The notes under the pieces are model-generated. The model was not told the DNA's origin. It was given only the letters and a program-made list of their open reading frames with translations, and ran no database searches. A DNA stretch of 64,000 nt, taken from assembly GCA_028534125.1 (NCBI GenBank), contig CM052821.1, positions 2,356,001-2,420,000 of the forward strand, written 5' to 3'. Made by a program: the position numbers and the translations under genes. Positions 9,201-12,200 of the stretch are shown piece after piece. How positions within the stretch are numbered: position 1 is the stretch's first letter; every line of letters starts with the position of its first letter. The DNA comes from Lama glama (taxonomy: Eukaryota).

Positions 9201-12200
9201 CATTGGGACAGGGGTTAAGGAGCTGAGGGGCCAGGGCATCGGAAGGTGCGTCTACATGGACGCTGAAATCACAAGGAATTAGAAAGGGAGTGATTTTGGA
9301 GAAAGTGACACTGAACCAAGAGCTAAAAAATCCTCAAGGATGATGGGGGGCCTGGGGGCCTGTAGTGGGGTTCGTATAGTCTAATAACATGACTGTCAAC
9401 ACTGACTTTTCAGAGAGGAGAGAGGGAGAAAGGTCGGGAAACAGAGGTGAGGAGCAGAGTGGACTCATACCAGCCTCCAGGTCCAGTGGTCCATGAGCTG
9501 TGAGAAGGAAAATCAGCACCCTTGGGACCCAGAGGATTAAAGAGGGATGAGAGATGGGTCAGAAGGGCCATGCCCGGAGTTGTAGGGTCCAGGGACGGGG
9601 ACTGGCACGCGCATCCCGGGCTTCTTGATCTCACCCTGTGCAAACACAAAGGACACGGTGATTTTACTGCCCACAGCTGAAGGCAGGTAGCAGTCAGCAC
9701 TCAGGTGTGAGTGCTGGGGAACAGGAGCGTGGAGCCTGCAGAGTCCTGGGGCCTGTTTTCGCTCCTGCCAGCAGAGTTGATGCATTTGTTCAGGGACCAG
9801 GGCAAGGCCTGGGAGTCCCAGAGATGGCTTCCCAGGGGCCGTTCCTGGACGTGGCCGGGAGGGACCAGGAGTGGTCTTCTCTGTGGGGACAAAAGCCTGG
9901 GGGGCTCTAAGGTCTCTTGGAAGTTGCTTTATCTCAGACCACATTGAATTACTGGAAGCAGCAGAGCAAACATCACCCTGTGGCTTGAGAAAGAGTTGCT
10001 GTTTCCATCAGATACTTCGTTCACAAAGGACGATGCGTTAGGGAAAATAACTGCATATCTTATTTTAAAATAATAAAACAAGCAAACAGAGGGCAGAGGG
10101 CCCAGCACCGGCCCTGTGACCTGGGTCTGACTTCCCCTCACGCCCATGTGGTGCCCACAGCGAACCCGTCCTACGTGCCCCCACCCCAGTGCCAGCCGGG
10201 TGAGTTTGCCTGCTCCAACAGCCGCTGCATCCAGGAGCGCTGGAAATGCGATGGGGACAATGACTGCCTGGACAACAGCGACGAGGCGCCCGCCCTCTGC
10301 CGTGAGTCACCGCCCCGCGCTGTTGGACAGCAGGCCCGCGGGGCAGCAGCTGGAGAGCTGGGGCCCCTCCCTCAGGCTGACCCCTGACCCGTTCCCTCCC
10401 CAGATCAGCACACCTGCCCCTCGGACCGGTTCAAGTGCGAGAACAACCGTTGCATCCCCAACCGCTGGCTCTGTGACGGGGACAATGACTGTGGGAACAG
10501 TGAAGACGAGTCCAATGCCACTTGTTCAGGTGGGGTGGTGACCACTCTGCGTCCCTCGGTAGCTGGGGCAGGGCAGATGGGGGAGCCAGGCTTGAGAAGA
10601 CAGAAGGGCCTCAGAGAGAGAAAGGAGTGTGGGGCAGGGAAGAGGGATCCTGGGCAGGAGGAGACGTGTGCCCCCCCCTCCCAGTGAGGACGGGAGGCCC
10701 CCACTTGCAGGGGGCAGAGCACAGCTCCAGGCTGGGGATGACAAACGAGGTGAGCGGGCCTTCTCCTTGGAGGACACCAGCGTCCCCTCAAGAGATGGGG
10801 TGAGGCATCCGATACGAGACCACACGGGTGGTTTTGAACAACATCTCTAAGGGAAATGGCTTTGAGACCCTTGGGAAGACTTCCGGAGAGGCAGAGAACA
10901 ATAGGAAAGAAAATGGAGTTAAAGAGGGGACTCAACTACAAGCACTTATGCCCATCCCTGCCCCCAGCTCGCACCTGCCCACCCAACCAGTTCTCCTGCG
11001 CCAGTGGCCGCTGCATCCCCATCTCCTGGACGTGCGACCTGGACGATGACTGTGGGGACCGCTCCGACGAGTCAGCCTCGTGTGGTGAGCGGGGCAGCAG
11101 GAAGGCCCGGCTGGCACGGGAAGGGAGGGCCCACGAGAACGTACCCTGGGGCTTAAAAAGGATGCTCGGAGGGATGAGAGTTGAACAGGCAGGGTTTCAG
11201 GCCAAGGCACCGCCGCTTAGCCTCCCCTCCCCTCACTGGCTGGGCTGGGCTGGGCTGCCAGTTACGGAAGGGGCCCTGCGCCCACCCTCTCAGTGCTACG
11301 TTGCTGTGTAGTCTTGAGGACCCTACTCAGCTACTCTTTCTCCCTGACAGCCTACCCCACCTGCTTCCCCCTGACTCAGTTTACCTGCAACAACGGCAGA
11401 TGCATCAACATCAACTGGAGGTGTGACAATGGTAAGAGCTTGTTCCCCTTCACCTGCCCGGATGCCTAGGAAGCTGGAAACCACAGCCAGGCCCTGGGTG
11501 GGAGGGGAAGGGGTTTTAGAATCAGTTCACTGAATCCCTGCTGGGTTGGCTGGGGGCAGTGAGGACGAGTCAGAAACACTGGGGGAACCGAGATGGACCA
11601 AGAGGAGACCCCACCCATCACCCATCAGCTCCATGCCTCCCCGAGCAGGGCCTGAGATGCCCATCCTCTGGCAGAGGCTCTGGGGCCAGGGAGAAATGAG
11701 CAAATAGGGCCAGAGGGGCAGAGCAAAGACAGCCCAGTGCCCAACTCCCTTCTCCCTGCGAGCTCTGTCTCCTGGGGTCCTTGGTGCAACCTCCGGGCTC
11801 CGACTCCAGGCTCGGGAGCCCACCTTGCGGTCAGCCCTGGACCAGGTGACGTCATCCCAGAGCCACGGGGGCCGGTGGACCGTTGTGTGTGCACTGTCTC
11901 GGGGCTCTGGTTGTGTCTGGTGTGGTGTTGTGACGTGTCGCAGCAGTGGCTCGAGCCCTGGCTCTCGTGTGTGAGGATGTGTTGGGTCAGCGCCACGTTG
12001 CCCCTCATCTTTGCCGTGTCTTGTGTGCCAATGGCTGCCCTGGCGGTTTCTGTGTTTCAGAGAAGGATTGTGGGGACGGCTCTGACGAAAAGACCTGTCC
12101 TGAGCCTGCCGGTCAGTGCATAGAAGCACATGCACCATCACCCCTAGATCCCCAGCTGGCCTCGGGCCGCCTCCCAGGACCCCCAGGAGCTCCCCTCCCC

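What the first reader, a model, noticed from the sequence alone, without database searches (positions are those of the whole stretch)
12061..12111. Hidden 51-nt cassette exon that rewrites ligand-binding repeat CR6 of LRP1
Seen: intron 19 splits CR6 in the middle (..WRCDN | [13 protein letters not shown]). Inside it is a segment with a U-rich acceptor (tttctgtgtttcAG) and a GTCAGT donor, 51 nt long and phase 1-1, reading [17 protein letters not shown] in frame with exon 19. That is a complete second C-terminal LDLa half (D-C-x-D-x-S-D-E-x-x-C) plus a linker, very unlikely to be chance. Established: LDLa disulfides are C1-C3, C2-C5, C4-C6; the W/D/D/D pocket around Ca2+ binds ligand lysines; CR5-CR6 of cluster II contributes to RAP and uPA:PAI-1 binding. 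Inference: inclusion builds a variant CR6 (CDNEKDC instead of CDNDNDC, so D>E and N>K at the acidic pocket) and leaves the canonical half as an orphan two-Cys acidic spacer before CR7. This would be a splice switch for ligand specificity not present in the canonical 89-exon model. It may already appear in predicted isoforms; I cannot check that.
Basis: partly seen in the sequence, partly recalled or inferred. Interest (0 to 1): 0.85.

Follow-up and report, generated by a model that had tools for sequence, protein, structure and literature searches.

The report
Conserved alternative LRP1 exon, already described
The 51-base segment is a real alternative exon of the receptor gene LRP1, kept from lamprey to mammals, that adds a second copy of half a ligand-binding module; it was already reported in human in 2007 and is in public gene models, but its function has never been tested.

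Summary
Window 12061-12111 is 51 nt, flanked by AG and GTCAGT, phase 1-1 and stop-free. It reads [17 protein letters not shown], a complete C-terminal LDLa half plus a short linker. It is the only intronic hit of this motif in 64 kb; about 9e-6 are expected by chance.

It is not hidden. Leparc & Mitra 2007 (PMC1904267) predicted this exon in human LRP1 intron 19. They confirmed it by semi-nested RT-PCR, cloning and sequencing as a minor variant in 17 of 18 tissues.

I found the same 17-residue insert, at the same place, in 32 public LRP1 models. These come from dog/wolf, ferret and puma (identical to the window), birds, crocodilians, a gecko and at least 14 teleosts. A second lamprey LRP1-like gene has it too, with and without the insert. 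LDLa consensus positions are invariant and the linker positions vary. In six other genomic copies the exon and about 20-30 nt of each flank are invariant while the rest of the intron diverges.

The acceptor is weak and lies behind a UG-rich tract, which fits low, regulated inclusion.

Read-level RNA evidence in this species could not be obtained. The proposed ligand-specificity switch remains an inference.

The parts
11351..11431 (+). LRP1 exon 19: N-terminal half of ligand-binding repeat CR6 (C1-C4, ends ..WRCDN plus 1 nt). Donor is ATG|GTAAGA.
11881..12041 (+). UG-rich tract upstream of the cassette; candidate splicing-regulatory region (inference).
   Evidence: measured over 11881-12060: G+T 0.69 and 18.9 TG dinucleotides per 100 nt, against 4-7 per 100 nt in the rest of the intron.
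12042..12060 (+). Conserved acceptor region (..ggcggtttctgtgtttcAG); weak acceptor.
   Evidence: Translated block GGFCVS is invariant in 7 genomic copies. Acceptor PWM score is 1.80; only 3 of 73 constitutive acceptors of this gene score lower.
12061..12111 (+). 51-nt alternative cassette exon, phase 1-1, encoding [17 protein letters not shown]: an LDLa C-terminal half (C5, DxSDE, C6) plus the linker PEPA.
   Evidence: Human orthologue validated by RT-PCR (PMC1904267).
12112..12143 (+). Donor GTCAGT and a conserved downstream intronic block.
   Evidence: Translated block GQCIE[A/T]HAPSP is invariant in 7 genomic copies. Donor PWM score is 6.85, with 23 of 73 constitutive donors lower. The predicted hairpin is not significant (z = -0.46).
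13022..13189 (+). LRP1 exon 20: canonical C-terminal half of CR6 ([13 protein letters not shown]), SHS linker and all of CR7. Phase 1-1, 168 nt.

Best explanation
Window 12061-12111 is a genuine, deeply conserved, frame-preserving alternative coding exon of LRP1, between exons 19 and 20. It is usually skipped, so it gives a minor isoform.

When included, it inserts 17 residues directly after C4-D-N of repeat CR6 in ligand-binding cluster II.

Inferred mechanism:
- The insert is contiguous with the N-terminal half and carries every Ca2+-cage and cysteine position. It therefore most likely completes CR6 itself.
- Relative to the canonical half, 5 of 13 residues change: D>E, N>K, N>G, A>K, G>T.
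- The canonical half ([13 protein letters not shown], two cysteines) is displaced into the connection to CR7. The CR6-CR7 linker grows from 3 to 20 residues.
- The cysteine count stays even, so the displaced pair can form its own C-x8-C loop.

What is shown: the exon, its splice sites, its conservation, its presence in public isoform models, and human RT-PCR from the literature.

What is inferred: which half folds into CR6, and any effect on ligand binding. Confidence in the real conserved coding exon is about 0.9. Confidence in the folding and ligand-tuning part is about 0.5.
For: 1. Anatomy and non-chance.

2. Human orthologue. In PMC1904267, Table 3 lists LRP1 intron 19 with peptide GDGSDEQTCPEPADN among 26 novel exons confirmed by cloning and sequencing. 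Figure 4 shows the product in all tissues tested except uterus, as a minor variant.

3. Public models. 32 LRP1-type proteins carry a 17-residue insert at exactly this junction; 213 have the canonical junction.
- Dog/wolf X1 (XP_022279791.1), black-footed ferret X1 and puma are identical to the window.
- Also golden eagle, ruddy duck, Crocodylus, a gecko and at least 14 teleosts.
- Alligator X1 has the insert and X2 is 17 residues shorter.
- A second lamprey LRP1-like gene has isoforms with the insert (X1-3, 5, 6) and without it (X4, X7).

4. Protein-level constraint. In 16 distinct gnathostome cassettes, E1, D3, C4, D6, S8, D9, E10, C13 and P14 never vary. Positions 11, 12 and 15-17 vary freely. 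The length is always 17.

5. Flank conservation. Window 12042-12143 is invariant when translated, while the surrounding intron diverges to 42-90% identity.

6. Module quality. Against an LDLa profile built from 26 other LRP1 repeats, CR6 scores 47.8 bits with the cassette half and 46.7 bits with the canonical half. The displaced half gives only a partial 11.4-bit hit. E at C4+3 and K at C4+4 both occur in canonical LRP1 repeats in this window.

7. Splice strength. A weak acceptor (3 of 73 lower) behind a UG-rich tract fits low, regulated inclusion.
Against:
- The 20 runs that hold the segment hold it together with its intron flanks, and none is on record as RNA.
- The human validation used a primer inside the exon, so only the upstream junction was sequenced, and the variant was minor.
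- Predicted isoforms are gene models, not proteins. No proteomic evidence was seen.
- A CR6 region with eight cysteines could misfold.
- No insert was seen in the sampled shark/chimaera LRP1 (17), the other lamprey LRP1 gene (30), hagfish (6), amphibians, lungfish, bichir, coelacanth or LRP1B (about 30). These were small samples of clusters.
Confidence: 0.85

Rival explanations
1. The exon is real and conserved, but its role is to tune LRP1 output rather than ligand specificity. Inclusion would make a poorly folding, ER-retained or degraded receptor, that is, a frame-preserving 'unproductive' isoform. Alternatively, the conserved block acts mainly as an RNA-level splicing or regulatory element.
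For: - It is a minor variant in human tissues.
- The acceptor is weak.
- The intron flanks are conserved as strongly as the exon in mammals, so part of the constraint is at the nucleotide level.
- Eight cysteines in one module region invite mispairing (inference).
Against: - Across 16 distinct cassettes, the invariant positions are exactly the LDLa fold and Ca2+-binding positions, while the linker positions vary. That is a protein-level pattern.
- The length is fixed at 17 codons from lamprey to mammals.
- There is no stop or frameshift, so it is not a classical poison exon.
Confidence: 0.12
2. The exon is real, but the canonical half still completes CR6. The 17 inserted residues loop out between C4 and C5 as a small disulfide-closed acidic loop.
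For: - Both halves carry the full motif.
- The canonical half is more strongly conserved: [13 protein letters not shown] is almost invariant.
Against: - The Ca2+-binding loop between C4 and C5 is only five residues long in every LDLa repeat of this gene.
- A 17-residue insertion there would break the cage, whereas the contiguous cassette preserves the spacing exactly.
- The profile alignment pairs the N-terminal half with the cassette at full length and leaves the canonical half as a partial hit.
Confidence: 0.1
3. The segment is a decaying relic of an old partial exon duplication, spliced in only as noise and copied between gene models by annotation pipelines.
For: - Splice signals alone do not single it out. 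28 AG..GT pairs in the same intron score at least as well.
- Gene models can propagate through protein-based prediction.
Against: - No LDLa half in the window is more than 67% identical to it at the nucleotide level (30 of 45 nt), so it is old.
- Even so, the motif, frame, length and splice sites are intact from lamprey and teleosts to mammals.
- The flanks are conserved while the rest of the intron diverges.
- The human product was cloned and sequenced.
Confidence: 0.03

Closest known systems
Novel human LRP1 cassette exon in intron 19 (Leparc & Mitra, Nucleic Acids Res 2007, PMC1904267; sequences deposited in GenBank EF491733-EF491822)
   Same: Same gene, same intron and same peptide (..GDGSDEQTCPEPA|DN in human, against ..[13 protein letters not shown]|DN here). 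It was predicted from conservation plus splice sites, and confirmed by semi-nested RT-PCR, cloning and sequencing.
   Different: Different species, with one residue changed (K here, Q in human). The paper scored it as a casein-kinase-1 site, which makes little sense for an extracellular domain, and did not note that it is a duplicate LDLa half. Only the upstream junction was validated there.
RefSeq/Ensembl predicted LRP1 isoforms with the 17-residue insert, e.g. dog isoform X1 XP_022279791.1 (4561 aa), Mustela nigripes X1 XP_059259472.1, Alligator X1 XP_059575204.1, stickleback X1, medaka X7
   Same: Identical insert position and length. The carnivore inserts are identical to the window's translation. 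Each insert is followed by the canonical half and CR7.
   Different: These are computational gene models. They carry no functional annotation of the insert.
Alternatively spliced ligand-binding repeats of ApoER2/LRP8 and VLDLR (e.g. PMC11293713, PMC5038150)
   Same: The same receptor family uses frame-preserving cassette exons in the LDLa region to vary ligand binding.
   Different: Those cassettes add or remove whole LDLa repeats. This one adds only a C-terminal half-repeat inside a repeat, creating two competing halves. No other such tandem half arising from a cassette exon was found in the LRP1, LRP1B and LRP2 proteins retrieved.
Mutually exclusive exons arising from tandem exon duplication
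   Same: The cassette looks like an old partial duplicate of the 5' part of exon 20. It has the same phase and encodes the same structural element.
   Different: The two are not mutually exclusive. All 32 insert-bearing models contain both halves. Exon 20 also encodes CR7, so it cannot simply be swapped out.

Membership tests
LDL-receptor class A repeat (Pfam PF00057), C-terminal half | D-C5-x-D-x-S-D-E-x-x-C6 acidic Ca2+-cage motif with two cysteines eight residues apart | tested here: met
   [13 protein letters not shown]. These positions are invariant in 16 distinct gnathostome cassettes.
LDL-receptor class A repeat (Pfam PF00057), C-terminal half | Match to the family profile | tested here: met
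   In Pfam, the genomic reading frame matches profile positions 22-37 of 37 only (E 0.04, 14.6 bits). That is below the 24.1-bit cut-off, as expected for half a domain. Joined to the N-terminal half in the dog isoform, the module scores 47.8 bits on an LRP1-derived LDLa profile, against 46.7 bits for the canonical CR6.
LDL-receptor class A repeat (Pfam PF00057), C-terminal half | C2-C5 and C4-C6 disulfides and Ca2+ binding in the folded module | not testable with these tools
   No protein of 1200 residues or fewer carrying the insert was available by reference. The joined window product was not built, by rule, so no structure was predicted.
Conserved alternative cassette exon | AG/GT borders, length a multiple of three, no stop, frame kept with both neighbours | tested here: met
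Conserved alternative cassette exon | Orthologous exon at the same position in distant species, with conserved intron flanks | tested here: met
   Mammals, birds, crocodilians, a gecko, teleosts and a lamprey paralogue. Flanks are conserved at the translated level in 7 genomic copies.
Conserved alternative cassette exon | Both inclusion and skipping forms in one species | tested here: met
   Alligator X1 against X2. Petromyzon X1-3, 5, 6 against X4, 7. Crocodylus P0404 against P0153 and P0405. Chinook salmon P0391 against P0392. These are models, not reads.
Conserved alternative cassette exon | Transcript evidence in the species of the window | not testable with these tools
The runs found hold the unspliced context, and none is on record as RNA. 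The only transcript evidence is for human, from PMC1904267.
Mutually exclusive exon pair | The two homologous exons never occur in the same transcript | tested here: not met
   All 32 insert-bearing models contain the cassette followed by the canonical half.
Poison (NMD-triggering) exon | Inclusion introduces a frameshift or a premature stop | tested here: not met
   51 nt, open frame, and the downstream frame is preserved.

The most novel reading that the evidence does not exclude
The cassette is a vertebrate-wide 'half-module swap', present from lamprey to mammals.

On inclusion, the inserted half would replace the canonical half in the Ca2+ cage of CR6. This places K and E next to the acidic lysine-binding pocket. 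It also turns the canonical half into a disulfide-stapled acidic spacer that moves CR7 about 17 residues further away.

The result would be a regulated LRP1 isoform whose cluster II has a different ligand repertoire or bivalent binding geometry.

No paper in the searched library describes this reading.
Probability: 0.35. Interest if true: 0.7.

Novelty: already known. Interest (0 to 1): 0.4.

Why it matters
LRP1 is usually treated as a single-isoform receptor, and cluster II is its main ligand-binding region.

- RAP domains bind tandem CR pairs of cluster II with nanomolar affinity, and two adjacent repeats give most of the binding energy (PMC2708935).
- An exon kept for more than 400 million years alters one repeat and its spacing to the next. 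It is therefore a cheap, well-defined candidate for isoform-specific ligand binding.
- It is also a variant that standard LRP1 constructs, antibodies and variant-interpretation pipelines ignore.

The exon itself is not new. What is still open is its tissue pattern, whether the protein is made, and what the insert does.

Tried and rejected
Read-level RNA evidence
- The look-up of sequencing runs gave 20 holders of 12041-12131. All held all 7 sampled words, including the intron flanks, and none is on record as RNA.
The only call was counted, so no junction counts exist.
They were masked in my local scripts.

Orthologous introns
No nucleotide alignment or dN/dS could be made.

Recent duplication: rejected
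- The best LDLa half in the window is 30/45 nt identical.
- The repeat finder shows only the generic family.

A decayed N-terminal half upstream (a whole relic repeat): rejected
- Pfam matches only profile positions 22-37.

RNA hairpin at the donor or acceptor: not significant
- z = -0.46, -0.60 and -0.09.

Splice-site scores as a discriminator: not sufficient
- 28 other AG..GT pairs in the intron score at least as well.

Structure prediction of CR5-CR7 with the insert: left out
Exons were handled one by one, by reference, and the public dog isoform was used by id.

Other points
- Further literature searches for a functional study of this isoform found none.
- One human entry returned inside a cluster (P0288) was left out of all analyses.
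- N runs were not touched.
- The species was not identified. It is a placental mammal whose LRP1 is 97.9-98.8% identical to the carnivore, cetacean, bat, rodent and pika proteins compared.

Full report
**What is in the sequence**

The window carries most of an LRP1 gene on the + strand. It runs from about residue 282 to the C-terminus, with at least 71 internal exons resolved.

- Exon 19 ends at 11431 with ..W R C D N plus one base.
- Exon 20 begins at 13022 with [13 protein letters not shown].
- The intron therefore cuts repeat CR6 between C4 and C5.
- Inside this 1590-nt intron, 12061-12111 is 51 nt long. It is preceded by ..tttctgtgtttcAG and followed by GTCAGT.
- In phase 1 it reads [17 protein letters not shown] without a stop.

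**Is it chance?**

D-C-x-D-x-S-D-E occurs 24 times in the six frames of the 64 kb. Every hit is on the + strand and in a canonical LDLa exon, except this one. From the window's own six-frame residue frequencies, 8.75e-6 chance occurrences of D-C-x-D-x-S-D-E-x-x-C are expected.

It is not a recent copy either. The most similar LDLa half in the window shares 30 of 45 nt.

Pfam sees only the C-terminal half (profile positions 22-37 of 37) in the genomic reading frame. So there is no decayed whole repeat hidden upstream.

**It is already described**

A full-text search led to Leparc & Mitra, Nucleic Acids Res 2007 (PMC1904267).

- Their program required splice sites, an open frame and PhastCons conservation.
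- Table 3 lists, among 26 novel human exons 'confirmed by cloning and sequencing', LRP1 intron 19 with the peptide GDGSDEQTCPEPADN. This is the same exon with one residue changed, read on into exon 20.
- With an exon-specific semi-nested primer, the product appeared in all tested human tissues except uterus. The authors call it a minor variant that flanking-primer PCR does not detect.
- Only the upstream junction was validated.
- They interpreted the peptide as a casein-kinase-1 site. They did not note that it is a duplicate LDLa half.

**It is in public gene models and is very old**

I used one long LRP1-specific exon of the window to reach full-length LRP1 proteins. I then ran two region-restricted searches and three cluster look-ups. 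This gave 32 LRP1-type proteins with a 17-residue insert exactly between W-R-C-D-N/S and the canonical half. Another 213 had the canonical junction.

| Group | Insert |
|---|---|
| Dog/wolf X1, black-footed ferret X1, puma | [17 protein letters not shown] (identical to the window) |
| Golden eagle, ruddy duck | ..KNCPKPT |
| Crocodylus, Alligator X1 | ..KNCPKSA |
| Gecko | ..KNCPKAT |
| At least 14 teleosts | ..[LMF][NH]CP[NHK][LP][ATP] |
| Second lamprey LRP1-like gene | [10 protein letters not shown][HN]RCSLFY |

Both forms occur within one species in several cases:
- Alligator X1 has the insert, and X2 is 17 residues shorter.
- In Petromyzon, X1-3, 5 and 6 have it, and X4 and X7 lack it.
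- The same holds for Crocodylus and chinook salmon.

Among 16 distinct gnathostome inserts, E1, D3, C4, D6, S8, D9, E10, C13 and P14 never change. Positions 11, 12 and 15-17 change freely, and the length is always 17. That is the pattern of a coding exon under selection for the LDLa fold.

I did not see the insert in the sampled shark/chimaera LRP1, the other lamprey LRP1 gene, hagfish, amphibians, lungfish, bichir, coelacanth or LRP1B. These samples are small, and absence there proves nothing.

**Intron flanks**

The genomic reading frame through the exon found six ORF-like proteins called on other genomic contigs of unnamed organisms. In the alignment, the block GGFCVS | exon | GQCIE[A/T]HAPSP is invariant. 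This corresponds to window 12042-12143: 19 nt upstream, the exon, and 32 nt downstream. The rest of the intron translation drops to 42-90% identity. Conserved flanks are typical of regulated alternative exons.

**Splicing strength**

I located 73 constitutive donor/acceptor pairs of this gene by aligning the dog protein. I then built position weight matrices from them.

- The cassette donor scores 6.85 (median 7.73; 23 of 73 lower). GTCAG donors also occur at five constitutive exons.
- The acceptor scores 1.80 (median 10.88; only 3 of 73 lower).
- The 180 nt upstream are strikingly UG-rich: 18.9 TG per 100 nt, against 4-7 elsewhere in the intron.
- A small hairpin predicted at the donor is not better than shuffled sequence.

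A weak acceptor behind a UG-rich tract fits low, factor-dependent inclusion. That last step is inference.

**What inclusion would do**

This section is inference, with one supporting computation.

The insert follows C4-D-N directly. It restores the normal five-residue spacing to C5, the D before C5, D-x-S-D-E and C6.

Against an LDLa profile built from 26 other LRP1 repeats, CR6 scores 47.8 bits with the cassette half (dog isoform X1) and 46.7 bits with the canonical half. The displaced canonical half gives only a partial 11.4-bit hit.

E at C4+3 and K at C4+4 both occur in normal repeats of this gene, in CDGENDC, CDGEDDC and CDGDKDC.

The likeliest product is therefore:
- a CR6 whose C-terminal half differs at 5 of 13 positions;
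- followed by P-E-P-A, the old half with two cysteines that can pair with each other, and then S-H-S and CR7.

The CR6-CR7 linker would grow from 3 to 20 residues. RAP domains bind tandem CR pairs of cluster II, and two adjacent repeats provide most of the energy (PMC2708935). Both the pocket change and the new spacing could therefore alter binding. None of this was tested.

**What could not be done**

Those places were sent to no search tool afterwards.
- The runs that hold the segment hold it with its intron flanks, and none is on record as RNA.
No short insert-bearing protein was available by reference, so no structure was predicted.
- A human entry returned inside a cluster (P0288) was left out.

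**Verdict**

The reading 'alternative cassette exon that supplies a second C-terminal half of CR6' is well supported.

It is not a discovery. The exon was published for human in 2007 and sits in many RefSeq and Ensembl models.
- recognition that it is a half-LDLa duplicate;
- its reach back to lamprey;
- the residue-level conservation pattern;
- the weak acceptor and UG-rich context.

Its function remains open and is easy to test.

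Noticed in passing
window 12702-12908: In the same intron there is a 207-nt, frame-preserving, stop-free AG..GT segment. It has the strongest decoy acceptor of the intron (score 15.7) and a fair donor (7.0). 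It encodes no recognisable domain. It overlaps the other first-stage note at 12843-12914 (s1-858941).
   Followed up: partly
window 11881-12060: A UG-rich tract lies directly upstream of the cassette: G+T 0.69 and 18.9 TG per 100 nt, against 4-7 in the rest of the intron. It is a possible binding platform for UG-binding splicing factors.
   Followed up: partly
window donors at 19919, 23297, 35101, 39432, 48912: Five constitutive LRP1 exons use GTCAG donors (C at +3), the same unusual type as the cassette donor.
   Followed up: no
proteins P0411, P0480-P0493 (lamprey LRP1-like gene): A second lamprey LRP1-like gene has its own 17-residue half-repeat insert, [10 protein letters not shown][HN]RCSLFY, at the same junction, present in some isoforms and absent in others. 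Its sequence resembles the single canonical half of gnathostome LRP1B ([13 protein letters not shown]).
   Followed up: partly
proteins P0437 (stickleback, Ensembl) and P0540 (ostrich): Two gene models run past the cassette donor into intron sequence, through a longer alternative donor or read-through. They are probably annotation artefacts.
   Followed up: no
window about 12215-12240, compared with protein P0270: A genomic ORF from other assemblies is identical to the window through the cassette. It then shifts frame in the A/G-rich stretch downstream, which suggests an indel difference between individuals or close relatives.
   Followed up: no
window 18071-18226, 19392-19563, 55904-56075, 59032-59163: There are four runs of N (632 bases in all). 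Two interrupt the LRP1 exon chain (unresolved junctions around 18070-19744). They were left untouched.
   Followed up: no
window 53000-64000: Sequence downstream of the LRP1 3' end includes a GC-rich stretch around 56300-57400, possibly the start of the neighbouring gene. It was not examined.
   Followed up: no
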